Notes: generated by a model from the sequence alone, not told the origin. A stretch of DNA of 35,475 nucleotides from Octopus bimaculoides (GCF_001194135.2 NC_068991.1:25907272-25942746), one strand, 5' to 3'; positions 11,820 through 34,799 are shown, counted from the stretch's first letter. A program made the numbers and translations.

Positions 11820-14460
11820 ATATNNNNNNNNNNNNNNNNNNNNNNNNNNNNNNNNNNNNNNNNNNNNNNNNNNNNNNNNNNNNNNNNNNNNNNNNNNNNN
11901 NNNNNNNNNNNNNNNNNNNNNNNNNNNNNNNNNNNNNNNNNNNNNTATATATATATATATCAGCATACATGAATATATAACGATTCTTAATTACATGTAA
12001 ATAAGCTGGATAACTTCAAATAGAATGTACTTGTTCTTGTATACGCTATGTTGATCTGATTAGGGCTGTCTTGGAGCTAGTAAAACGACAACTGCAACAA
12101 TAGCAACGACAACAATCAAGATCCACGGCAAAACACACTTGTTAATTTTGTTTTGTTTAGATTTTTATATTCGTTCATTAATTATTCGATCATTAACAGC
12201 AATTTGTGAAAAATAATGGGAATTGTATTGGTTAACTGCTCTGTAAAACTTATTGTCCTGATTTTATTTTATGTGTATACTGAGGTATTGAGAGGAAATA
12301 CAATCTTCCCCATACGGAATCACGATGACAATCTCATGTCAACGTTTTTAGCAAAAAACACTGCAGCTAGGCATATTGATATCACCACCAGATAGCAGAA
12401 TTTAACAGTAGTTTAACTGACATAACTCTGTTAAAGGAAAAAAAGAAGAGAAGTAAATGTAAAGATAGCCTTTCTCTGCGAAATATTGCTCAATCTTATA
12501 AGTGTCAGTTTGAAAGCGCGCTTTCAGATAAAGTGATAGCTTCTACAATACACATTAGGAAAAATATTCTTAATTATGACATTAATCTGACATTTGAAGT
12601 CACGAAAACAATGACAAAAAATATAGTTAAAATGGGTAATTTTTCAATAAGGCTATTTACAATAAAATAGTATAAGAAACACAACTTTGTGTCATCAATA
12701 TTTCTCTTCCGCGTTTCAGATTTATTCTGGACTTAGTATATATCTTATCTATACAACATGACATCGTATCAGCTGAAATTGTTTTGTTCAATGTGGATAA
12801 ATTTTGATCAATATCAGAACTGTCATGATCGGAAAATGCTATAAGCTTAGATAAACTTTGATAGATTTCAGCTAGTATTGATTGATCCATATAGTTTTTA
12901 ACTCTAACACACCACCTGGTGAAGTCATCAAACTCTTTGTTTGGGAGACCATTGCTCAGTCGATTAAGGAACTGTTATTGACTGAAATATATGCAGCTGT
13001 AGGCAATTTATCGGGAATTTCTTGGAAGATTTTTACAGATACATTTGATAGGCTTAGAAATTTTTGTTTCCTTGATTTGTTGTGGAAATATTGAATAGAA
13101 CAGTTCTGATTCAGGATAAAAGATGTGTCATGATGCGGTTGCTATGTATAGAAGGTTCAGTTTCGGTATTGGGTAGGTGTTACATCTTGATTCATTTCTA
13201 AAACTTGATTCTAACCCTAATGGTATATTTTCCATAATGTACAAATAGTGTTGGATTTCCAAAGAGCTGCACTGGATAGGTGATCTCAGAATTCAGGGGA
13301 TCACATGCCACATATTATTAATGAGATTCATGCCGTATAAAAATTCAATATTATTACATAATGCTATTGAGTAGAAGTAACATAGAACAGTAATAATGCT
13401 TGGCCGTGAAGGCAAGTATTTTGTTCTACAAAAGGGACTTGGAGTTCGGTGCTACTGTTAGGTTCCTTAGGGAAGTGTCAGTCTATTACTAAGAACATTG
13501 GTTTTTAGCAGACGACACACTTCCGAGTTGCGAGTGAAACTGTACGGACACTTGTTACAAATATACACACTTGTTTGTGTGTATGTGTGTATTTTATGAT
13601 TTCCTTATTCATAGCGGTTACAACGTATAACGTCTGTTACAAGTCAATGTATTCATGTCTTAAAGTAAAACCACTGGTAAGAATAGTGCATAATAAGAAT
13701 TATTGAACACTGAGTGAGATGGGGTTACGAGGTACGCAATAACTTAAAGCTTAAAGCTCTTTTTTCTATTAAAAAAACATGTAATCAGATCTGAGAGGGC
13801 GTGCATACAGCGGAAGCAGCTATATGCTAACGAGGCTGAGTACATAAATCCTTTTCCTTTGTTATTTATTCATAAAATATATATAATACGGATGTCAGTC
13901 TGTATGCGTTTCTATGTGTCTCTGTGTATGTGTGTCACTTACTTGCATGCTCTTGTATTCATGCAAACATTTTCAGAATCACTGCTTGAAAAACGATGTT
14001 TTTTGTTTTTGTCTCGTAACTCAGCGATTAGGTAAACAAATCAATACCCGGCATAAAACAACAATTGGGAAGGGTACAATAGACTAGTGCCCTTCAAAGA
14101 AGTGGCGAAGTATAGTGATAAACAGATGACTGAAACAAATGAGTACAAAACTGACAGTATCCATCTGTCTGTGTTTGTATGTATGTATGTGCCTGTCTGT
14201 ATTCTGTCATACATATATTTATGTATGTATGTATATATTTGTAACGACCTGGTAGTCATAATCCAAATCTACACAACCAAAAATAATGGGGTGAACCCAA
14301 AACAACAACACACCATGAAGGTTTTTAAAATATTATTAACAATTAAGTGTCAGCATACACAAACAACCTACATACAAACAAATATATTGAATAAATATCT
14401 TAATGCTACACTAGAGGTGCAGTCAAAATATTTACAAAGTAAAATAAATACAGTTTAGAC

Positions 14461-14650: not shown

Positions 14651-15413
14651 CTAAACATAAATAAATCTAATGTCAAAGCAACCACTGAAACTAAAATTTC
14701 ATGACACAAAACGGCTGTCAGACTACCTCAATAATTATAGTTAAGAGATAAATAGTCAAACAAATAATCTAGTTTGCTTTAAATTCACAGAAAACTACTT
14801 CATACTGAGTAACCATTAGACAAAATTTACAAAAAATTGGCTTCATAAAAAATTAAATTCATGAACCACTCTCGCTATTTATACAAATTTGTCAACCTTT
14901 ATCTTAACAGAAAATAGCTAGCAAAATTATTACACAACCTGCCACAAAGCAGGGTTCAACATTCACATAAATATTGCAATAACATAACTTAAGAGATGTT
15001 TGTACTCACCCAGATGTGACAGAGAAATAATTTAAATCTGACAAGCAAAAGTTCTGGCGAGTTCTTGGAGCATAAAATAAATCCATAAATGCCTAACACA
15101 AAGCACAGAGTGCATAAACTAAACAGGCAATTATAGCTTCCAGATTCCAATTGAACGACCTTGTCTCACAGAAGAAAACTGTAACTGTCACAAAAACCGA
15201 GTGTACAATTATCTCTGCTTATAATGGTTTGCTAAGGTCTAGTCAAATTCTTACAGTTTCACAGTTTGGCTATTTACACCTAACTTCCCCCATTTTGACA
15301 ATGGACTTGACCCTGACCTTACAGTGCAGCATGCAAAACTCTGTTTATCTGTTTACTTCTCAACATTTATAATGCAGTGTAGGTAACACTGACCAATGAT
15401 AATATTATTATTT

Positions 15414-15636
15414 AAGGCGGCGAGCTGGCAGAAACGTTAGCACGCCGGGCGAAATGCTTAGCGTATTTCGTCTGCCGCTACGTTCTGAATTCAAATTCCG
15501 CCGAGGTCGACTTTGCCTTTCATCCTTTCAGGGTCGATAAATTAAGTATCAGTTACGCACTGGGGTCGACTTAATTCGTGTGTCTGTCCTTGTTTGTCCC
15601 CTCTATGTTTAGCCCCTTGTGGGTAGTAAAGAAATA
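15414..15636 (+). mobile_element. tRNA-derived SINE, near full length (cephalopod type)
   Basis: A-box-like TGGCAGAAACGTT, B-box-like TTCAAATTCC, body GTCGACTTTGCCTTTCATCCTTTCAGGGTCGATAAATTAAGTA; related copies at 8785, 26285, 26715, 27402. Confidence 0.85.
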
Positions 15637-15706
15637 ATGATAATATTATTTCATGCTATACACATAAAACAGGCATAATTTTTAAGAAAAACTTAATTTC
15701 TTAACA

Positions 15707-15756: not shown

Positions 15757-16470
15757 ATTAGAAAATGGAGAATAATATGCTGTACCCAACGACTTGCAGA
15801 CAGTGTATTCCTTTGAATTAATTAACTTATTTTGTAACTATATATATATGTGTACTCACATATATATATATGATCGTGAATCATTGGACATCTAAGTATG
15901 GTTATGCACACAGACTTATATATTTGAGTGTCTATGACTATTTGTATGACCTCATGTACAGTTTGTAGGCTTTTTATGTGCCTTATATATTTATATTCTT
16001 CTATATTTTTATATTTTATATTTTCATTTTTCATTTATTTATTTGTTTATTTTATTTTTGCTGTAACCTTATCTTTATTTTTATTTTTTTAATTTTTACT
16101 TCTATTTCATTTTTGTTTTTATCTCTTACTGTATATCTGTATGGAATGTTTTGTGAATCTCTGAAGAGGCCTAGCGAATTATGCATGTACCCCTATTTCA
16201 GCATTTCATCCGCTAATTACTCCACCAGGAGCTATTCGGATAGAATGGGGCATGCCGACGCTAGGCCGAAACAACTGTAAGTTTATGTTTATTCTCAAAT
16301 TCCTAATGTACTTTTATTTGTAAACCCGGTTGTCAATATAACATGGTTCGTCATAAACACTTGTATTTTGTGTTTTTTTGTCACTTTAGTTACAAAATAA
16401 ATTAATTAATTCAACGGAATACACTGTCTGAAAGTCGTTGGGTACAGCATGTTATCCTCCATTTTCTAAT
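15757..16470. repeat. 84-bp inverted repeat pair (15757-15840 / 16387-16470) enclosing an HHR
   Basis: Manual reverse-complement alignment, 5 mismatches in 84 bp. Confidence 0.92.
16153..16286 (+). ncRNA. Type I hammerhead ribozyme with a 100-nt extended stem II
   Basis: CTGAAGA(16161-67)-GGCCTAGCG..82 nt..CGCTAGGCC-GAAA(16268-71)-C aact GTA; stem I GTGAATCT / AGTTTAT with one bulge. Confidence 0.78.
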
Positions 16471-16891
16471 TGATATATAAATTTAGGGTAAAACAACCCC
16501 CCTTTTACCCGCACCCACTTATTACACTTGGTATAACACTAGTGTAACAATAATTGGGTACCCTCCCAGCAGTATATTGGATAGATACTATCCCTTAGTG
16601 GGTTGAATCCTCAACCCCTAACTCTCTTGCATTANNNNNNNNNNNNNNNNNNNNNNNNNNNNNNNNNNNNNNNNNNNNNNNNNNNNNNNNNNNNNNNNNN
16701 NNNNNNNNNNATTAACAGTAACTGCATGATAAAGTGAAGTATATTTGCCATTTAAATGTGGCTGACCCCTAAGGATGGATATTACTGTTGCTTTTAGCCC
16801 CAGGAGAACATCTCCTCCAGCTGGCTTATCGACACACATCTGTGTCCTGTCTCTTTTTGCCAAGGGAAGTTATCCCTCCCATCTTGGCCTG

Positions 16892-16948
16892 CGATACGTA
16901 CGGACCCGAGTTTCAGGGTTATTTCCCTTCTTCAGCGTACGATAATCG
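16892..16948 (-). ncRNA. Canonical type I hammerhead ribozyme (minus copy)
   Basis: Reverse complement CGTACG-CTGAAGA-AGGG aaataa CCCT-GAAAC tcgg GTC-CGTACG; predicted cleavage between 16903 and 16902. Confidence 0.92.
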
Positions 16949-17340
16949 CCGACCTTCGATGAGAAGGACAATCCTTTGGCAAAATATAAGTCTTTTTCCA
17001 GTTATTTGAAGTTATTCACTGATATCAGGACACAGATGTGTGTCGATAAGCCAGCTGGAGGAGATGTTCTCCTGTGGCTAAAAGCAACAGTAACATCCAC
17101 CCTTAGGGGTCAGCCACATTTAAATGGCAAATATACTTCACTTTATNNNNNNNNNNATCCACCCTTAGGGGTCAGCCACATTTAAATGGCAAATATACTT
17201 CACTTTATCGTGCAGTTACTGTTAATACCTCGTTCAGAGATTTAACATTGCTTGTTTTCACTTTTCCGATATCAGTGAATAGCTTCACTGGAAAAAGACT
17301 TATATTTTGCCAAGGGATTGTCCTTCTCATCGAAGGTCGG

Positions 17341-17396
17341 CGATTATCGTACGCTGAAGAAGGGAAATAACCCTGAAACTCGGGTCCGTACGTATC
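17341..17396 (+). ncRNA. Canonical type I hammerhead ribozyme (plus copy)
   Basis: CGTACG-CTGAAGA(17354-60)-AGGG aaataa CCCT-GAAAC(17375-79) tcgg GTC-CGTACG; predicted cleavage after 17386. Confidence 0.93.
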
Positions 17397-17940
17397 NNNN
17401 NNNNNNNNNNNNNNNNNNNNNNNNNNNNNNNNNNNNNNNNNNNNNNNNNNNNNNNNNNNNNNNNNNNNNNNNNNNNNNNNNNNNNNNNNNNNNNNNNNNN
17501 NNNNNNNNNNNNNNNNNNNNNNNNNNNNNNNNNNNNNNNNNNNNNNNNNNNNNNNNNNNNNNNNNNNNNNNNNNNNNNNNNNNNNNNNNNNNNNNNNNNN
17601 NNNNNNNNNNNNNNNNNNNNNNNNNNNNNNNNNNNNNNNNNNNNNNNNNNNNNNNNNNNNNNNNNNNNNNNNNNNNNNNNNNNNNNNNNNNNNNNNNNNN
17701 NNNNNNNNNNNNNNNNNNNNNNNNNNNNNNNNNNNNNNNNNNNNNNNNNNNNNNNNNNNNNNNNNNNNNNNNNNNNNNNNNNNNNNNNNNNNNNNNNNNN
17801 NNNNNNNNNNNNNNNNNNNNNNNNNNNNNNNNNNNNNNNNNNNNNNNNNNNNNNNNNNNNNNNNNNNNNNNNNNNNNNNNNNNNNNNNNNNNNNNNNNNN
17901 NNNNNNNNNNNNNNNNNNNNNNNNNNNNNNNAAGTCTGTC

Positions 17941-17990
17941 ATACCGGCCATGACGAAGGGAAATAGCCCTGAAACTCGAGTCGCCTTTAT
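17941..17990 (+). ncRNA. Sister hammerhead motif with palindromic loop III and a 1-nt core defect
   Basis: GGC-C(A)TGACGA-AGGG aaatag CCCT-GAAAC tcga GTC-GCC. Confidence 0.78.
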
Positions 17991-20864: not shown

Positions 20865-22800
20865 GTAAGGTAGATTCTAGGATGCAAGTGTAAGTATTTT
20901 GTAAGCTTTAAGCACTCCATAGCACGTATAGAAAACAAACAGATTTGACAGCATGTGATCAAGAACGATAACAGTTTATTTGTATCAAAGTTTACACGCT
21001 TTTTCGCTTATCGAAATTACCAGAAAATTCAATAAGCTGAAACTTTCTATATTGTAGTATCGCCCACGTTACCTTCTGTTTCGGTGATGAGTGACGATGT
21101 ATGTAATTTAAAAATCGCAATTGAGGGAGTGGAACGGATAAAATCAAGGCTACATATGTCTCCTAGTTCTCTAATCCTCTGATGTAACAAGTACTCCACA
21201 ATGGGTACTCAGCTAAGCTAGTCATCAAGCCTAATTGCTAAAATTATATGAACGTTACATTGTCCCAAGTTAACTTACCGCAGATGTAAGTTGAGTGGGT
21301 ATTCAAGACTTAATGAATAGGTTAACTGAGTACTTCTCGTTGAGTAAATACTACAACAGAGAACCGGCTATCTAAGAAACATATGTAGCCTGGTCTTTAG
21401 CCGTTCCACTGCCTTATTTTGGATATATATATATGTATGTGTGTGTGTGTGTGTGTCTGCGTCTGTGTGTACGTAATATGTATGTATGTATGCATGTAAG
21501 AGTGTATATATANNNNNNNNNNNNNNNNNNNNNNNNNNNNNNNNNNNNNNNNNNNNNNNNNNNNNNNNNNNNNNNNNNNNNNNNNNNNNNNNNNNNNNNN
21601 NNNNNNNNNNNNNNNNNNNNNNNNNNNNNNNNNNNNNNNNNNNNNNNNNNNNNNNNNNNNNNNNNNNNNNNNNNNNNNNNNNNNNNNNNNNNNNNNNNNN
21701 NNNNNNNNNNNNNNNNNNNNNNNNNNNNNNNNNNNNNNNNNNNNNNNNNNNNNNNNNNNNNNNNNNNNATATATATATATATATAAACACGTGCACACAA
21801 ACACACATACATATATATATAATCTACAAAGATGAAAGGAGAATTATATATTTTAATTCATATTAATAAATACTCCATAATTTGCTTGAATGTATTTCAG
21901 GTGAGATAGTATTAAGTAACACAACGGTGCGTTAATTCTATACCTTAATCAATCCTTATTTTTAAAGATACCAGTATTAAATAAATTTAGGAAAATCAAC
22001 ACTGGTAACTCTTTCTCTGAGCAACCACATCACAAAGAATGCAGGACAGAGAACCATCAAGGTATTGTAGCAGACTTCCCTCCGGTCTAAATCCAGCAAT
22101 GGGTGAAGGCAAGTATAAACATTAAAATAAATCAAATAATATTGAGATTTTGAAATATGTGGTAAGACTTTTTATCACTTTTAAAATTTCACTAACGTAG
22201 ACAAAATATGATAAGAATAGATAAGATAAATATATTCAAAGTATAACCAAAATATATTATTTAGGCTGCTAAGTTGCACCAGCGTGTAAGAAACATAAGT
22301 TTATTAAAGTTACAATGAGAAAAATAATCTGTAACTTAATCCTATTTATAATATATACTGTAAAACCTATTGATAAGAAAATATTTCAAATTCAAGCTAA
22401 GAATAAGAATTCATTACGTTTGTCATAACTGAAGGAAAACCACTAATAAAGAAAACATAATCAGACCTGAAATGTTCATCAACTGATAAAGTATGATAAA
22501 TTAAATTAATAAATACATACGGGATAATTAATTGTCTTTGGACGGCACAGAGTAGTCTACTAGTATATTCTGTTGGGTTCGCATCATATACTGTTCAGTC
22601 TCTGATGTGGGTGATAACGTTGTGTTTCTAGATCTGTATAAAACTATAGCTGGTTGTTTATGGGTCGTGTAACGTACATAATTAACGCAACATGGTATTC
22701 CGTAACACTAGCGTATCTGATATGCGGATCAGCAAATTATGGATTATTAATTATGAATTTAAAAAGTAGGATTTTCTATTTTTTCTTTGAGTTTGATACA

Positions 22801-22899: not shown

Positions 22900-23599
22900 N
22901 NNNNNNNNNNNNNNNNNNNNNNNNNNNNNNNNNNNNNNNNNNNNNNNNNNNNNNNNNNNNNNNNNNNNNNNNNNNNNNNNNNNNNNNNNNNNNNNNNNNN
23001 NNNNNNNNNNNNNNNNNNNNNNNNNNNNNNNNNNNNNNNNNNNNNNNNNNNNNNNNNNNNNNNNNNNNNNNNNNNNNNNNNNNNNNNNNNNNNNNNNNNN
23101 NNNNNNNNNNNNNNNNNNNNNNNNNNNNNNNNNNNNNNNNNNNNNNNNNNNNNNNNNNNNNNNNNNNNNNNNNNNNNNNNNNNNNNNNNNNNNNNNNNNN
23201 NNNNNNNNNNNNNNNNNNNNNNNNNNNNNNNNNNNNNNNNNNNNNNNNNNNNNNNNNNNNNNNNNNNNNNNNNNNNNNNNNNNNNNNNNNNNNNNNNNNN
23301 NNNNNNNNNNNNNNNNNNNNNNNNNNNNNNNNNNNNNNNNNNNNNNNNNNNNNNNNNNNNNNNNNNNNNNNNNNNNNNNNNNNNNNNNNNNNNNNNNNNN
23401 NNNNNNNNNNNNNNNNNNNNNNNNNNNNNNNNNNNNNNNNNNNNNNNNNNNNNNNNNNTATATATAAAAGTAATTTTCGGAAAGGACTTAGAACCATTGG
23501 GAACAGAGGTGAGATACAATCCTCTACTTCCCGTGACAGAATATGAGGACTTGAAACCATACATGATCCGATAATGTAAGTTTAAATTTGATTTAAGAT

Positions 23600-24861: not shown

Positions 24862-26130
24862 TTCGCTAACCATGACAGCAACGTTCAATTCACAACGGAA
24901 TATAGAAAAGAACAGCTTCTATTTTTGGATATTATGATATTATGATATCATGATAAACAGTCAACAACCAAATTATAACTAACATCTATCATAAACCAAC
25001 GGACTCGAAGCAATATCTCCTTTTTAACTCATACCACCCGCAACACATCAAAATACATATTCCCTTTAATTTGGCAAAAAGAATTTGCACAATAGTGTCT
25101 GATAGAGCTACTCAGGACCTTCGCCTTCAAGACCTCAGAGCAACACTAACTGAAAGACAGTATCCACCCTCATTTATAGACGATATAATTAAGCGTATCA
25201 AGAAATTAGACATAAAAACACTAAGGACAACAAAACATAACACCACACCTCATCTCAAAATACTACTGTGTATATCAACTCACAACCCTAGAAACAATGA
25301 GGCATACAACACTATTGTACAAAATCTTCCTTTACTAACTAGTGACCCCAAAAATGAACAACATCTTGAAAGCACATAAATCCATCAAATGCAAAAAGAA
25401 ACACAAATCGCTAAAGAGACATCTAACAAATATGAAGCTTTACACAACAACCACGAAACCAACAGTTAAAAATTGTGGACGACAAAACGGTGGAGTATGC
25501 CCCAACCTACTAGAAAGCTCGAATTTCCTTTTCAAACAAGTAGAGAAGTTCATAATTTGAAACCAACTTCACTTGTTCCTCTGAGAATCTAATTTATGTA
25601 ATAACCTGCTCGGGTTGTGGACATCACTATATAGGACAGATGAGTATGACATTAAGACGGAGAACCACTCTACATAAAAAGCGGATCCGGTTCCGCAATA
25701 CAGACATATTACTTTAAGTGAACATATAGAGAAATGTGCAGGTAACATCAAACCAAATTTCACAGTTTTCCCCTTCTATAAGTTCAAAGATACAATTTCT
25801 ATACAAGAACGTTTAAATAAATTTATTCATCGAAAAATACAGAACACGTCTAAATATGCATGCATAACCAGCTTTGATCTTTTTACAGATTTTAATTCAC
25901 GATTACACGTCCATCACTGTACATATTTCTACCTACTACTCTAGCTTTTGAATTACACCCCCTTAGATTTTTATACATGTTGAATCATTCATTCATAAAC
26001 TCCACACACACACCATGGAGAAAAATTTTTTTCTGAAGAAAATACGTATTTAAATAAATTTGAATGTCATGATTAGCGAAAGCGAAACCCGACAAGCACA
26101 ATATAAGATATATTAAAAATTATATTAAAA
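24862..26130 (+). mobile_element. Penelope-like retroelement relic 3 (5'-truncated): RT thumb, Cys-rich linker, GIY-YIG, 3' region
   Basis: VQFTTEYRKEQLLFLDIMI, IYHKPTDSKQYL, NLAKRICTIVSD..LRLQDLRATLTER, CGRQNGGVCPNL, NFTCSSENLIYVITCSGCGHHYIGQ; right boundary approximate. Confidence 0.9.
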
Positions 26131-29022: not shown

Positions 29023-29136
29023 TTTCTTCATATAATAAATAGTTTATCTTGAAAAAACTAAAGGAATATCTACTAATAACATTACACAGCTATAGTGGTT
29101 ATTAAAACAATGAGTTCATGGATGATCAATGGTTCA

Positions 29137-29189
29137 GATCGGTGCTGATGAATGGGAAAAACTCCCGAAATATGGCATATACGCCCATT
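29137..29189 (+). ncRNA. Candidate type I hammerhead ribozyme with no adjacent PLE coding sequence
   Basis: GATCGGTG-CTGATGA(29145-51)-AT-GGGA aaaac TCCC-GAAA-TAT ggc ATAT-A-CGCCCATT; stems I, II and III all pair. Confidence 0.65.
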
Positions 29190-32100
29190 ACCCATTTTCT
29201 TCTTCCTCGATCTCATTGTTTGTTTACATCTGACGTCTCAGATACGAAACGTCGTAACAAACTCATTACTGGCTAAAATTTCTATAGAAAATCAGTAGAG
29301 ATGGCATTAACACGTGATTTAAGAGCATTGCTAACAGAGTTGTACATGGTGTTGTCTTATGAAATTGTTTAACATACTTTATAGTATATTATGCTTGCAT
29401 AAAGAAATGCCGTGTCCCTGCAAGTTATTCATGTGTAGTTGATTGTTTCTCTTCAAATGTTTTGAGAAGACATTATCACACTACACCAACACAGTGAGGC
29501 ATGCTGTAACCTATAACATTTTAAATTTGCCTCTTCTGCTCTTCTCTTCGAGTCAATCTATTTAAAACAAATCAACTAGGGAGATCCTAACTCGACAACA
29601 TTGTTGACTCTTAGTCCTGCTTTAATTCTTTTCTGTCAAATATTTTATAATATTCTACAAGTCGAAATTAAAACTTGTCACATGTAATTGACACAATGTT
29701 TCAACCCACTTGTGTCTAGACGTACATTACACGAAGTGTATGTCTTTGCTTAATTTGGTATGACACGAATTGAAGGAGATGTGATTACCACCTGTACAGG
29801 ATTGAACGAACTTCAAAAGCCTTTTCTTAGTTCAACAGTCTAACACAGGAAATCGGTGAAGGTCACGATAATCTAACCAAGGCAATGCATGAATTTTACC
29901 TACTGGAAAATACGCAATCAAACCAGATACATAAATGACATTCATTTCAGGACTTGATAGCTTCTGAGAAATGTCTACAGTGTTGAGACAGTAATAAAGA
30001 ATTGTTCTATGTTATGCTGAAGTATTGTAATGTAATCAGTCTTGATACGACACCACAAGCACCAGACTATTGTTCAAAACCGATAGAAATCTGGAACGAC
30101 TAAGAAGGTTGCACCATTTAAGAATTATTTGTCGGAGCCAACGACTTTCACGTTGGTAAAGCAGCAGTAACCCAATCTTTGCCGGTTGTTTCTAACTAAA
30201 TCTACTCCACTGAAAACCATGTCTCTCACTCTCACTTTTACTTTCCCTCTCTTATTCTCTTTCTCTCAATTGCGCAGACTCAAAAACAGACACTCTCTCA
30301 AACATTCTTATATTCACGCAACTTAACATTACTAAATAACATCAATACTGTTGCATAAAATAAAAATAAACAACGGTTCATGGTTCATGCTGTATTGTAG
30401 CTATTTGCAGTCCTTTATTCTTGAATTAGCTGGAAATATGATACTTGTCTCAGATAAAAAGAAAGCTAAGCCATCAGTTAATTACACATTGCAAACTGCA
30501 GCGCCTAATTAATTGAATAATTATAATTGATACACAGCTGTCAGCTGCAGCATCGTCTAAAGAATATATTTCATTAGGTTAGCAGAATGAAATGCCGCAT
30601 TTTATTGTCTTATGAGCTGTCATACCATTTCAATTAAGGGATCGCTTCTATCACATGTGTATGGTGTGTTTCGCAGTGTGATATATAAGGAAAGATACAC
30701 CGAAGAGAACGATTGTTTTCTTTCATCACTTACTATCTATTGAAACAAATAGCTTAATACGAAATCAAATCTGCTCCACAAATGGCAATTCTTTCAAGAC
30801 GAAATCTGTTCTAACAAGCGTCTAAACTATTGAATCTATAAAAAGGAAATATTTCATGATATTATTTTATAGAATTATTCTAGATTTTTATTGAATAATT
30901 TAGAATCTGCAGTGTTAAAGGTTTTTCATATCAAAGAAACGAAATAGAATGTGAATGATTTATTCTTATCTCAATTATAAAACACATTTGCGAGAGAAAT
31001 TTCCATGGAGACACATATTTAATACACATATAGCTCAATGGACATATTTCACTATAATAGCGCTCCATATGGTTGGAATTTATATCCTAATTCTCTGGTG
31101 TCGATAATAACGATATGATTTCTCTACTATATATGTCTATGACCTCGAAAAATTTGGAATTTCCCCTTCGCATGAAAATAACAGCGGTTCGTAACATAGG
31201 AACATAACCACAAATTTTAGATGAAGAATATACACCATTGAAATCATCGGGGAATTTATGGACATGTTATCGGACTAAAAGAGATAAAAGGAAAGTCGAG
31301 AAACTTACAGGGTATTTCCAGTAAGATCTGGAAATATCAACCAGAAAGCATTTTGTGCAATGTTTTCCCATTTCTATCATACAAGAGCTTGATAAAAATT
31401 ACAATAGGAAAAAGAATTTTTGAAATCTATGAAATCTAGATGCCAAAACATGATAGGTTACAGCAACATTTAACGCGAATGAAAGAAGAGTTAATTAATT
31501 AATGGTCATCATCAGAATCAAATATTCATACCACTACATGCCAAGCAAACCTCTAATGCCAGCTGATATAGTTAAACAGTAATTGTAAGGTCAGACATGT
31601 CGCATTTAGCCGACAGGCTGGAGGAATACTGAAGTATAGAAGGATTTCAATAGTTTACGCATCTTGGAAAAAAATTTCGTTGTATAGATCTAAAAAAAAA
31701 AATCCTTCATCATATTTGTAATCCAGATATTTGTAACCCCCACCAACACCGTATTTTAAATTGTATTTTTACTGACAAGTTCCCGTAATGAAACTTTCTC
31801 CATATGCTTTCATATAAGAAGTAACTGTCCTTTATATTAACTATATGGTATTCATAAACGATGCATTTAACTCAAGTTATAACAACATATACCACATATT
31901 ATAACATACTTCTATCATGAAAAGGATGGTCTACCATGGTGTTAGTAGTAGTCGCTAAATAAAGATGGAGAAGTAAAGATATATTAAAGACCCGTATTTA
32001 CTATCAATATAGGTGTGCTGAAAATAACTGTCTAACATCAAAATGAAATACAGGAAATTAATTATTTCTCGCATAAGTTAAGTGGAATCAACAACTGCAA

Positions 32101-34324: not shown

Positions 34325-34799
34325 AATGATCCTAGTTAGTCGACCAGACAATCGTTAAAGATAGGGAAGAAAATACTTGCAGACTAATAGATGTAAGTCT
34401 TCCCACTGATAAGAAAATATATCTGTAAGGGAATTTGACAAATTAAATAATATATTAAGACCTGGAAATGGAAATACAAGAGATGCGGCATCGTAAAGCG
34501 AGAACTCATCCTGTTATTGTGGGTGCGCTACGTATTATAGAAAAGGAATGTCAGAAACATCTAGATAATATCTCAGGAGAATCATGTCTCATAGAAATCC
34601 AAAAGATTGTGCTGACAAGTACTGCTCGCATCCTTAGAAAAAATCCTATCCATTTAAATGTCTGTGTTGTATTACTTAAAGATGTTTCGCCACTGCCCCT
34701 GTCACTTCTCCTCGCCAACTTTCAGTCATACCGTCACTCGCCTTAGGACGCTGGGGGTGTCTTAGCAAGTGACTGTAACAAACATGCATGTTAAAAGTA

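What the first reader, a model, noticed from the sequence alone, without database searches (positions are those of the whole stretch)
16711..17396. Retrozyme-like unit of about 352 nt with a canonical hammerhead, circularly permuted and inverted
Seen: four segments, A (139 nt), B (43), C (129, HHR at its 3' end) and D (41). The minus strand from 17026 reads C-B-A and the plus strand from 17026 reads A-D-C. Together they give one cyclic order A-D-C-B of about 352 nt, as expected for a tandem or circular monomer. The copies are about 97% identical by eye (about 6 substitutions and a 5-nt indel). The HHR core is perfect in both. Segment A is heavily paired: GACACA/TGTGTC (17029-44), AGCCA/TGGCT enclosing AGGAGA/TCTCCT (17049-79), and ACAGTAAC/GTTACTGT closing a multibranch loop. 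There is no RT or GIY-YIG remnant. Established: metazoan non-LTR retrozymes are non-coding tandem monomers of a few hundred nt with type I HHRs that yield circRNAs and are thought to use PLE machinery. Inference: this is such a family in a probable cephalopod, sitting among PLE relics that could mobilise it. I cannot tell whether it has been described. Three assembly gaps adjoin or interrupt it, possibly hiding collapsed copies.
Basis: partly seen in the sequence, partly recalled or inferred. Interest (0 to 1): 0.9.

Follow-up and report, generated by a model that had tools for sequence, protein, structure and literature searches.

The report
Octopus hammerhead-ribozyme retrozyme repeat
This is a 352-base non-coding repeat in an octopus genome that carries a self-cleaving hammerhead ribozyme; it fits the known animal "retrozymes", small RNA circles copied back into DNA by Penelope-like elements, so it is a new example of a known kind and not a new kind of element.

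Summary
16711-17026 (minus strand) reads C-B-A and 17026-17396 (plus strand) reads A-D-C. The copies differ by exactly 6 substitutions and one 5-nt indel, and together they close a 352-nt cycle.

The 10-N gap at 17147-17156 is an unmerged contig overlap, because an exact 52-nt duplicate flanks it.

Each copy has a type I hammerhead (HHR): helix I 6 bp, helix II 4 bp, helix III 2 bp plus a tetraloop. This is the published canonical metazoan architecture. About 0.04 such motifs are expected per window by chance.

- The core is not perfect. Pair 10.1-11.1 is A-U, not G-C, and no Rfam hammerhead model matches.
- Neither copy exceeds one unit, so tandem or circular order is inferred.
- A third, broken hammerhead relic lies at 17932-17982 and ends exactly at the cleavage site.

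The monomer folds strongly (z = -5.9), is 43.5% GC, and has no coding homologues. The host is an octopod.

The Penelope-like element (PLE) relics in the window are degenerate, lie 7-12 kb away, and carry a different, minimal hammerhead. The head-to-head inversion matches published PLE insertion architecture.

No other copy of the family was reachable, so copy number, tandem arrays, circular RNA and cleavage remain untested.

Verdict: a new member of the metazoan non-LTR retrozymes.

The parts
16711..16849 (-). Segment A of the minus-strand copy (139 nt, branched hairpin domain). It is cut at its 3' end by the 76-N gap 16635-16710.
   Evidence: 97.1% identical to plus-strand A with no gaps. The hairpins appear in the MFE fold.
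16850..16892 (-). Segment B (43 nt), seen only in the minus copy. It forms the 3' strand of the long extension of helix I and pairs with the 3' half of C.
   Evidence: The MFE pairs monomer positions 1-48 with about 270-319.
16893..17026 (-). Segment C of the minus copy (134 nt), containing the type I HHR at 16941-16897. The predicted scissile bond lies between 16903 and 16902.
   Evidence: Descriptor hit with H1=6, H2=4, H3=2. HHR plus flanks fold at z = -6.1.
17026..17146 (+). Segment A of the plus-strand copy, first 121 nt. Position 17026 is the head-to-head junction with the minus copy (0-1 nt of microhomology).
17147..17208 (.). Assembly artefact: a 10-N gap plus an exact 52-nt re-read of 17095-17146. 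It should be collapsed.
   Evidence: family D1, 100% identity, spacing 62. Colinearity with the minus copy after collapse.
17209..17226 (+). The last 18 nt of segment A of the plus copy.
17227..17267 (+). Segment D (41 nt), seen only in the plus copy. It links A to C.
17268..17396 (+). Segment C of the plus copy (129 nt), containing the type I HHR at 17348-17392. The predicted scissile bond lies between 17386 and 17387. It is cut 10 nt after the site by the 535-N gap.
17932..17982 (+). Third, diverged relic of the same HHR lineage. Helix II, GAAA and helix III match at 29 of 32 positions, and the differences fall only at N7, loop 2 and loop 3. An 11-nt deletion removes the 5' strand of helix I and C3, so the ribozyme is dead. 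Homology stops exactly at GTC, the cleavage site, followed by AT-rich flank.

Best explanation
The locus holds two partial copies, in opposite orientation and joined 5' end to 5' end, of a 352-nt non-coding, non-autonomous retroelement of the metazoan 'non-LTR retrozyme' kind, in an octopod genome.

Inferred life cycle (none of it shown here):
1. Longer-than-unit transcripts are cut by the type I hammerhead after GUC, before CGUACG. Cleavage probably works best as a double hammerhead between neighbouring units, because helix III is only 2 bp while ACUCGGGU is self-complementary.
2. The 352-nt linear RNA has its two ends held together by helix I, which continues into a rod of about 45 bp formed by segments B and C.
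3. A host RtcB-type ligase closes the circle.
4. RT and GIY-YIG endonuclease of an intact Penelope-like element elsewhere in the genome copy the RNA into AT-rich or microsatellite DNA.

The head-to-head inverted arrangement is the published signature of PLE-type integration: an inverted 5'-truncated copy abutting the 5' end of the direct copy. It does not have to be a misassembly.

Shown here: the sequence anatomy, fold statistics, host, absence of coding capacity, and co-occurrence with PLE relics that carry a different hammerhead.

Inferred: cleavage, circularisation, mobilisation, and the tandem order itself.
For: - Cyclic closure: two independent copies (6 substitutions plus one indel apart) close a 352-nt cycle.
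- HHR architecture: helix I 6 bp, helix II 4 bp, helix III 2 bp plus a 4-nt loop. This equals the 'canonical metazoan type I' description in PMC4209133. Chance expectation is 0.037 per window.
- Conservation: the third relic keeps the HHR helix II/III/core stretch at 29 of 32 positions, with changes only at positions free to vary, while the upstream sequence has diverged and carries deletions.
- Fold: monomer MFE -122.1 kcal/mol against a shuffle mean of -87.7, z = -5.9, with 0 of 100 shuffles as good.
- Stem substitutions: 2 of the 3 substitutions in predicted stems are U.G <-> C-G changes that keep pairing at the RNA level only.
- Composition and size: GC 43.5% and 352 nt, against published <45% and 150-450 bp, and 350-390 bp in mussel.
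- No coding signal: no homologue among 5.8 billion proteins.
- Dimer: cofolding gives a double hammerhead with an 8-bp helix III at -29.5 kcal/mol, against 2 x -13.7.
- Context: octopod host and PLE relics. The PLE 3' region has its own minimal HHR, matching the published co-existence of retrozymes and PLEs with atypical HHRs.
- Arrangement: PLE insertions often carry an inverted 5'-truncated copy and break short-read assemblies.
- Precedent: O. sinensis locus L003 shows another HHR-bearing 475-nt unit in a tandem-plus-inverted arrangement ending in (TA)n.
Against: - Rfam: no hammerhead model matches, even at E<=10. The same was true for the L003 HHR, so the negative may reflect model insensitivity to these variants.
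- Core: pair 10.1-11.1 is A-U, a departure from the 15-nt conserved core.
- Monomer fold: the single-motif active fold lies 7.7 kcal/mol above an alternative in which CUGA pairs with loop 3.
- Unit length: neither copy is longer than one unit, so tandem or circular order rests on overlapping two inverted copies.
- Copy number: the only other trace of the family is the 51-nt relic at 17932-17982 in this window; no full copy was found in the rest of the window, in 132 kb of octopod loci, or in metagenome or viral collections. Copy number could be very low.
- Assembly: the piece is a small island between assembly gaps, so the join at 17026 could be chimeric.
- PLE link: no sequence similarity to the termini of the PLE family present in the window.
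Confidence: 0.72

Rival explanations
1. The segments are part of the pseudo-LTR or terminal region of a longer autonomous (or internally deleted) Penelope-like element. The 'cycle' is then the usual PLE partial tandem, not a small retrozyme.
For: PLE pLTRs carry HHRs, occur in direct or inverted form, and cause assembly gaps. Retrozymes and pLTRs are phylogenetically intermingled in Xenopus. A 535-N gap follows the plus copy. L003 shows an HHR unit directly 3' of a PLE copy.
Against: C-B-A and A-D-C close the cycle in 352 nt with no room for an ORF. The nearest RT relics are 7 and 11.7 kb away. The PLE family in the window has a different, minimal HHR (helix I 5 bp, bulged A plus 5-bp helix II, palindromic ACGU), and its 3' region shows no similarity to the unit. 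The estimated 535-nt gap is too small for an RT-EN ORF, though gap sizes are only estimates.
Confidence: 0.1
2. It is a dead relic or low-copy satellite fragment. The hammerhead-like motif no longer cleaves (or never did), and no RNA circle is made. The structure reflects ancestry only.
For: A10.1-U11.1 instead of G-C. No Rfam match. The active monomer fold is disfavoured by 7.7 kcal/mol. The minus copy carries a stem-breaking G-to-A change and a 5-nt insertion. The third copy is clearly dead. No other copies were found.
Against: All 13 invariant core nucleotides are intact in both copies, and both HHRs are identical over the 45 nt compared although the copies differ elsewhere (only about 1 change is expected there, so this is weak). 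Another octopus HHR (L003) also has A-U at 10.1-11.1. Weak single-motif HHRs that cleave as dimers are the rule in amphibian retrozymes and PLEs.
Confidence: 0.13
3. The inverted, permuted layout, though not the repeat family itself, is an assembly artefact: a short-read assembler joined reads from different genomic copies in opposite orientation.
For: The 686-nt island lies between a 76-N and a 535-N gap and contains a demonstrable unmerged overlap. The assembly has 8 gaps in 35 kb. PLE-type structures are known to confuse short-read assemblies.
Against: The arms differ at 6 positions plus an indel, so this is not a fold-back of one molecule. The junction is a clean base-level join with no N. 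Head-to-head joins are the expected PLE architecture. An analogous layout is present in a chromosome-scale O. sinensis record.
Confidence: 0.3

Closest known systems
Metazoan non-LTR retrozymes, especially those of the mussel Mytilus galloprovincialis (PMC7229834)
   Same: A non-coding unit of about 350 nt (mussel 350-390 bp). One type I HHR per unit, in one polarity only. GC below 45%. A highly self-paired predicted RNA. Co-existence with PLEs that carry atypical HHRs. Mollusc host.
   Different: No sequence similarity could be tested. Here only two copies of about 0.9 unit each, in inverted orientation, and one relic are seen, not a head-to-tail array. Pair 10.1-11.1 is A-U. Expression and circularity are unknown.
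Newt satellite 2 and axolotl retrozymes (HHR_Amex1/2)
   Same: Units of about 330-350 nt. Type I HHR with a very short helix III (1-2 bp plus a tetraloop) that favours cleavage as a double hammerhead. The self-complementary helix III segment ACUCGGGU here plays the same role.
   Different: Vertebrate host with 10^5 copies in long arrays. G10.1-C11.1 is, from memory, the usual pair there.
Minimal HHRs in pseudo-LTRs of Penelope-like elements (Cervera and de la Pena 2014; Lunse et al. 2017)
   Same: Type I topology, probable dimeric action, tandem or inverted genomic layouts, and HHRs 100-700 bp apart on opposite strands.
   Different: PLE minimal HHRs have helix I of 4-5 bp, helix II of 6-8 bp with a bulged 5' nucleotide, and little or no helix III, and they flank an RT-EN ORF. 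That type is present in this window at about 3645-3695 in the PLE relic, and it is not the type carried by the 352-nt unit.
Plant LTR retrozymes
   Same: Non-autonomous, HHR-processed, and thought to spread through circular RNA.
   Different: Type III HHRs inside LTRs, with PBS and PPT, 600-1000 nt, GC above 55%, mobilised by Ty3/Gypsy machinery.

Membership tests
Metazoan non-LTR retrozyme | Type I hammerhead with the conserved catalytic core and three helices | tested here: met
   CUGANGA, GAA, A15.1-U16.1 and C17 are all present. Helices are I 6 bp, II 4 bp, III 2 bp. Chance expectation is 0.037 per window. Caveat: 10.1-11.1 is A-U, not G-C.
Metazoan non-LTR retrozyme | Short (150-450 bp) non-coding unit without LTR, RT or EN | tested here: met
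   The cycle is 352 nt. The only long conceptual ORFs (100 and 102 aa) have no homologues. No similarity to the PLE proteins mapped in the window.
Metazoan non-LTR retrozyme | Head-to-tail tandem copies (dimers to large multimers) | tested here: inconclusive
   The cyclic order A-D-C-B is inferred from two inverted copies of about 0.9 unit each. No stretch longer than one unit is visible, and gaps flank both copies.
Metazoan non-LTR retrozyme | Low GC (<45%) and a stable, highly self-paired RNA | tested here: met
   GC 43.5%. MFE -122.1 kcal/mol, z = -5.9. 60% of bases are paired in the circular fold.
Metazoan non-LTR retrozyme | Expressed as circular RNA of about 170-400 nt; HHR self-cleaves | not testable with these tools
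Metazoan non-LTR retrozyme | Host genome also holds Penelope-like elements | tested here: met
   RT relics at 1462-3008(+), 3949-5029(-) and 24978-25232(+). Pfam RVT_1 matches their relatives. PLE-type minimal HHR in the 3' region consensus.
Rfam hammerhead families (Hammerhead_1 and relatives) | Covariance-model score at or near the gathering threshold | tested here: not met
   No hammerhead family is reported at gathering score, or at E<=10 on 901 nt or 81 nt. The L003 HHR also gave no match.
PLE pseudo-LTR | Repeat directly flanking an RT-GIY-YIG ORF and sharing the element's terminal sequence | tested here: not met
   The nearest RT relics are 7-11.7 kb away. No similarity between the unit and the PLE 3' region. 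The cycle closes in 352 nt.
PLE pseudo-LTR | Minimal HHR (helix II 6-8 bp with a bulged base, helix I 4-5 bp, helix III absent or palindromic) | tested here: not met
   The unit's HHR has helix II of 4 bp and helix I of 6 bp extended to about 45 bp. The minimal type is seen instead in the PLE relic.

The most novel reading that the evidence does not exclude
The locus may be a fossil of a single PLE-type 'twin-primed' integration of a retrozyme. Two cDNAs would have been primed from the two ends of one target break, meeting 5' to 5' at 17026. The direct arm would end exactly at the hammerhead cleavage site (17982, GTC followed by AT-rich DNA). If so, the template was a self-cleaved linear RNA whose 3' end is the GUC cyclic phosphate. 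This would be direct genomic evidence for how PLE machinery mobilises retrozymes, which is still only inferred from co-occurrence and pLTR similarity.
Probability: 0.2. Interest if true: 0.6.

Novelty: new member of a known kind. Interest (0 to 1): 0.38.

Why it matters
Retrozymes are among the most abundant small circular RNAs in some invertebrates, yet how they move is still argued from correlation with Penelope-like elements.

No paper in the searchable library links retrozymes with cephalopods. This unit, together with the two other hammerhead-bearing repeats noticed here, suggests octopus genomes hold several such families next to PLEs with a distinct minimal hammerhead.

Octopuses edit double-stranded RNA heavily, so a 352-nt, largely double-stranded circle would be an interesting substrate. 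That idea is speculative.

The head-to-head junction and an end at the cleavage site would, if they recur genome-wide, give testable footprints of the integration mechanism.

For assembly curators, the locus shows that these elements create gaps and unmerged overlaps.

Tried and rejected
- Rfam scans of the whole window (gathering score), of 16500-17400 and of 16880-16960 (E<=10) gave no hammerhead family. The independent L003 hammerhead also gave none, so I treat the negative as uninformative about activity but report it.
- I looked for other copies and found none. Exact and degenerate HHR patterns were run against JGI metagenome contigs (twice) and IMG/VR. The two long conceptual ORFs of the circle were searched as proteins, in the hope that gene callers had translated array contigs. 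BLASTN of the monomer was run against 132 kb of octopod DNA fetched around PLE proteins.
- Pfam on the window's RT-like ORFs and on the GIY-YIG-like remnant found nothing. PLE identity therefore rests on homologues with RVT_1/DUF8422, on motifs read by eye, and on the minimal HHR.
- A simple fold-back (palindromic read) artefact is rejected because the arms differ at 7 places.
- A protein-coding reading is rejected.
- tRNA-derived SINE: no tRNA was found in the window.
- My first Python shuffle routine timed out. The z-scores come from strand folding instead.

Full report
**1. The observation**

Reading 16300-17900 and running repeat detection shows three inverted-repeat blocks centred on 17026, plus one exact direct repeat.

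BLASTN of the reverse complement of 16711-17026 against the plus strand from 17026 gives two alignments:
- Segment A: 139 nt, 97.1% identical, 4 substitutions, no gaps.
- Segment C: 134 versus 129 nt, 94.8% identical, 2 substitutions and one 5-nt indel.

Segment B (43 nt) occurs only in the minus copy and segment D (41 nt) only in the plus copy. The minus copy reads C-B-A and the plus copy reads A-D-C. The only arrangement that holds both with single A and C is a cycle A-D-C-B of 352 nt.

One qualification: each copy is about 0.9 unit long. No head-to-tail repeat longer than one unit is actually seen, so the tandem or circular order is an inference from overlapping two copies.

**2. The gap flagged by the scan program**

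17095-17146 and 17157-17208 are 100% identical 52-mers, 62 nt apart. That distance is 52 nt plus the 10 N. Removing the gap and one duplicate gives an ungapped 139-nt alignment to the minus copy. The gap is an unmerged contig overlap and nothing is missing.

The whole piece is a 686-nt island between a 76-N gap and a 535-N gap. The window has 8 gaps in 35 kb.

**3. The ribozyme**

Both copies carry CGUACG-CUGAAGA-AGGG(AAAUAA)CCCU-GAA-AC(UCGG)GU-C^CGUACG.
- Helix I is 6 bp, helix II is 4 bp, and helix III is 2 bp with a tetraloop.
- Cervera and de la Pena describe 'canonical' metazoan type I hammerheads in exactly these terms: helix I 6 bp, helix II 4 bp, helix III 1-2 bp with a 2-4 nt loop (PMC4209133).
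- Under a first-order Markov model of the window, my strict descriptor is expected 0.037 times per window, and 0.003 times with helix I of at least 6 bp.
- It found nothing else in the window or in 132 kb of octopod DNA, apart from one independent hammerhead in L003.

Two caveats apply. First, pair 10.1-11.1 is A-U, not the usual G-C, so 'perfect core' is overstated. Second, no Rfam hammerhead model matches, even at E<=10 on an 81-nt slice. The L003 hammerhead, which also has A-U at 10.1-11.1, is likewise missed, so the models may simply be insensitive to this variant.

The single-motif active fold is 7.7 kcal/mol less stable than an alternative that pairs CUGA with loop 3. Two motifs cofold spontaneously into a double hammerhead with an 8-bp helix III (ACUCGGGU is self-complementary with G.U pairs): -29.5 kcal/mol against 2 x -13.7. 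This is the behaviour known for newt, axolotl and PLE hammerheads.

**4. The RNA as a whole**

- Numbered from the cleavage site, positions 1-48 pair with about 270-319. Helix I therefore runs on into a rod of about 45 bp made of B and the 3' half of C. This would hold the two cleavage ends together.
- The linear MFE is -122.1 kcal/mol against a shuffle mean of -87.7 (sd 5.8). That gives z = -5.9, with 0 of 100 shuffles as good.
- The 108-nt hammerhead region has z = -6.1.
- The opposite polarity folds less well (-99.8 against -117.1 as circles) and has no ribozyme.
- Of the six substitutions between the copies, three fall in predicted stems. Two are U.G <-> C-G changes that keep pairing only at the RNA level, and one breaks a pair in the minus copy. 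This is suggestive but anecdotal.
- GC is 43.5%.

**5. A third copy**

Right after the 535-N gap, 17932-17982 aligns to the end of segment C.
- The helix II, GAAA and helix III stretch matches at 29 of 32 positions. The differences fall only at N7, loop 2 and loop 3, which are free to vary. The loop 3 change makes ACUCGAGU a perfect palindrome.
- The upstream part is diverged and has 5-nt and 11-nt deletions. These remove the 5' strand of helix I and C3, so this ribozyme is dead.
- Homology stops exactly at GTC, the cleavage site, followed by AT-rich DNA resembling a microsatellite.
- This could mark the 3' end of an insertion templated by self-cleaved RNA. It is one case, and the relic is much more diverged than the two main copies, so it may be an older, separate insertion.

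**6. Host and neighbours**

- The ORF at 1444-2241 matches uncharacterised Octopus sinensis proteins at 75-83% identity, and many ENA proteins with RVT_1 and DUF8422.
- tblastn maps RT relics to 1462-3008(+), 3949-5029(-) and 24978-25232(+). They are broken by stops and frameshifts, and the nearest ones lie 11.7 and 7 kb from the unit.
- Window DNA matches O. sinensis PLE copies at 83-89% identity.
- I aligned the 3' regions of four such copies. The consensus folds as gACAC-CUGAUGA-A-GGCUG(...)CAGCC-GAAA-CG-UU^GUGUu.
- That consensus is a PLE-type minimal hammerhead: helix I 5 bp, a bulged A, and a palindromic ACGU helix III. It is decayed differently in each copy.
- So the PLE family present here carries a different hammerhead from the 352-nt unit.
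- The unit also shows no similarity to that PLE's terminus.
- This is the situation described for mussels and other invertebrates: retrozymes with canonical HHRs alongside PLEs with atypical ones.

**7. The inversion**

The 5' end of the minus copy (start of C) abuts the 5' end of the plus copy (start of A) at 17026, with 0-1 nt of microhomology.

Craig et al. state that PLE insertions often have an inverted 5'-truncated copy immediately adjacent to the 5' end. They add that such structures cause problems in short-read assemblies, and that PLEs favour microsatellites (PMC8557442). Cervera and de la Pena saw paired HHRs 100-700 bp apart on opposite strands.

In O. sinensis record CM016871.1 (locus L003), a different HHR-bearing unit of 475 nt shows the same style. 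It has 1.2 direct copies plus inverted partial copies, ends in (TA)n, and lies just 3' of a PLE copy.

The arms here differ at seven places, so a fold-back artefact of one molecule is excluded. A chimeric join between two genomic copies cannot be excluded, and I give it about 0.3.

**8. What could not be done**

No DNA-level search of cephalopod genomes or transcriptomes is available.
- HHR patterns found nothing in metagenome or viral contigs.
- The two conceptual ORFs of the circle (100 and 102 aa) found nothing among 5.8 billion proteins. This also argues against coding capacity.
- The monomer is absent from the 132 kb of octopod loci I could fetch.

Copy number, arrays, expression, circularity and cleavage are therefore open.

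**9. Comparison and verdict**

The unit meets most listed features of metazoan non-LTR retrozymes (PMC7229834):
- type I HHR;
- non-coding unit within 150-450 bp;
- GC below 45%;
- strongly self-paired RNA;
- PLEs in the same genome.

The tandem criterion is only indirectly met and the RNA criteria are untestable here. It does not meet the criteria for a PLE pseudo-LTR.

[quoted passage not shown] No searchable paper mentions retrozymes in cephalopods.

I rate it a new member of a known kind, with moderate interest.

Noticed in passing
window 3600-3745 (HHR-like core about 3645-3695); L001 10770-10915; L003 12290-12420; L005 9815-9960(-): The 3' region of the PLE family in this window carries a PLE-type minimal hammerhead. 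The four-copy consensus is gACAC CTGATGA A GGCTG..CAGCC GAAA CG TT^GTGTt. Every individual copy is broken in a different way (window: GAAATTTTGCGG; L001: G12 to A; L003: helix II deleted).
   Followed up: partly
window 1462-3400(+) and 3949-5029(-): Two degenerate PLE-like RT relics lie tail to tail, with an (AAT)n microsatellite near 3500-3580. The first has a GIY-YIG-like remnant readable by eye at about 3050-3170 (LFYSI*CSRGKLYKGET..EEHRK), but Pfam does not detect it. The two relics are only about 22-26% identical to each other's relatives at the protein level, so they belong to different families.
   Followed up: partly
L003 12413-13436 (Octopus sinensis CM016871.1): A second octopus hammerhead element. 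The unit is 475 nt, with a well-formed type I HHR at 12868-12915 (helix I 7 bp, II 4 bp, III 4 bp; A-U at 10.1-11.1). There are 1.2 direct copies plus inverted partial copies (98.8%, 81% and 78% identical). It ends in (TA)n and lies just 3' of a PLE copy. It has no similarity to the 352-nt unit outside the core.
   Followed up: partly
window 29119-29324(+); L004 26406-26614(-): A third repeat family (75% identical between the two loci) conserves CTGATGA-NN-GGGA..TCCC-GAAA, followed by a near-palindrome TATG(G)CATAT and A^CGYCC. Helix I changes keep pairing (U.G to C-G, G-C to G.U). It may be another PLE-type hammerhead with two unpaired bases before helix II. It did not pass my descriptor.
   Followed up: partly
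window 15411-15651: A SINE-like repeat of about 230 nt with 8 matches at 86-91% identity in O. sinensis loci L001, L003, L004 and L005. ARAGORN found no tRNA in the window.
   Followed up: no
window 25187-25946; L003 3455-4172(-): Another interspersed repeat shared with O. sinensis (80% over 765 nt), next to the RT fragment at 24978-25379.
   Followed up: no
window 34468-34746(+): A 92-aa ORF (…PVIVGALRIIEKECQKHLDNISG…IQKIVLTSTARILRKNP) that, from memory, resembles the C-terminal tail common in invertebrate retroelement polyproteins. Pfam found nothing.
   Followed up: no
window 5368-5658, 6965-7796, 11824-11945, 21513-21768, 22900-23458: Five further assembly gaps, several inside (TA)n, (CA)n or (TATG)n-type microsatellites. 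The long 'YIYIYI' ORFs in the ORF list are translations of these repeats.
   Followed up: no
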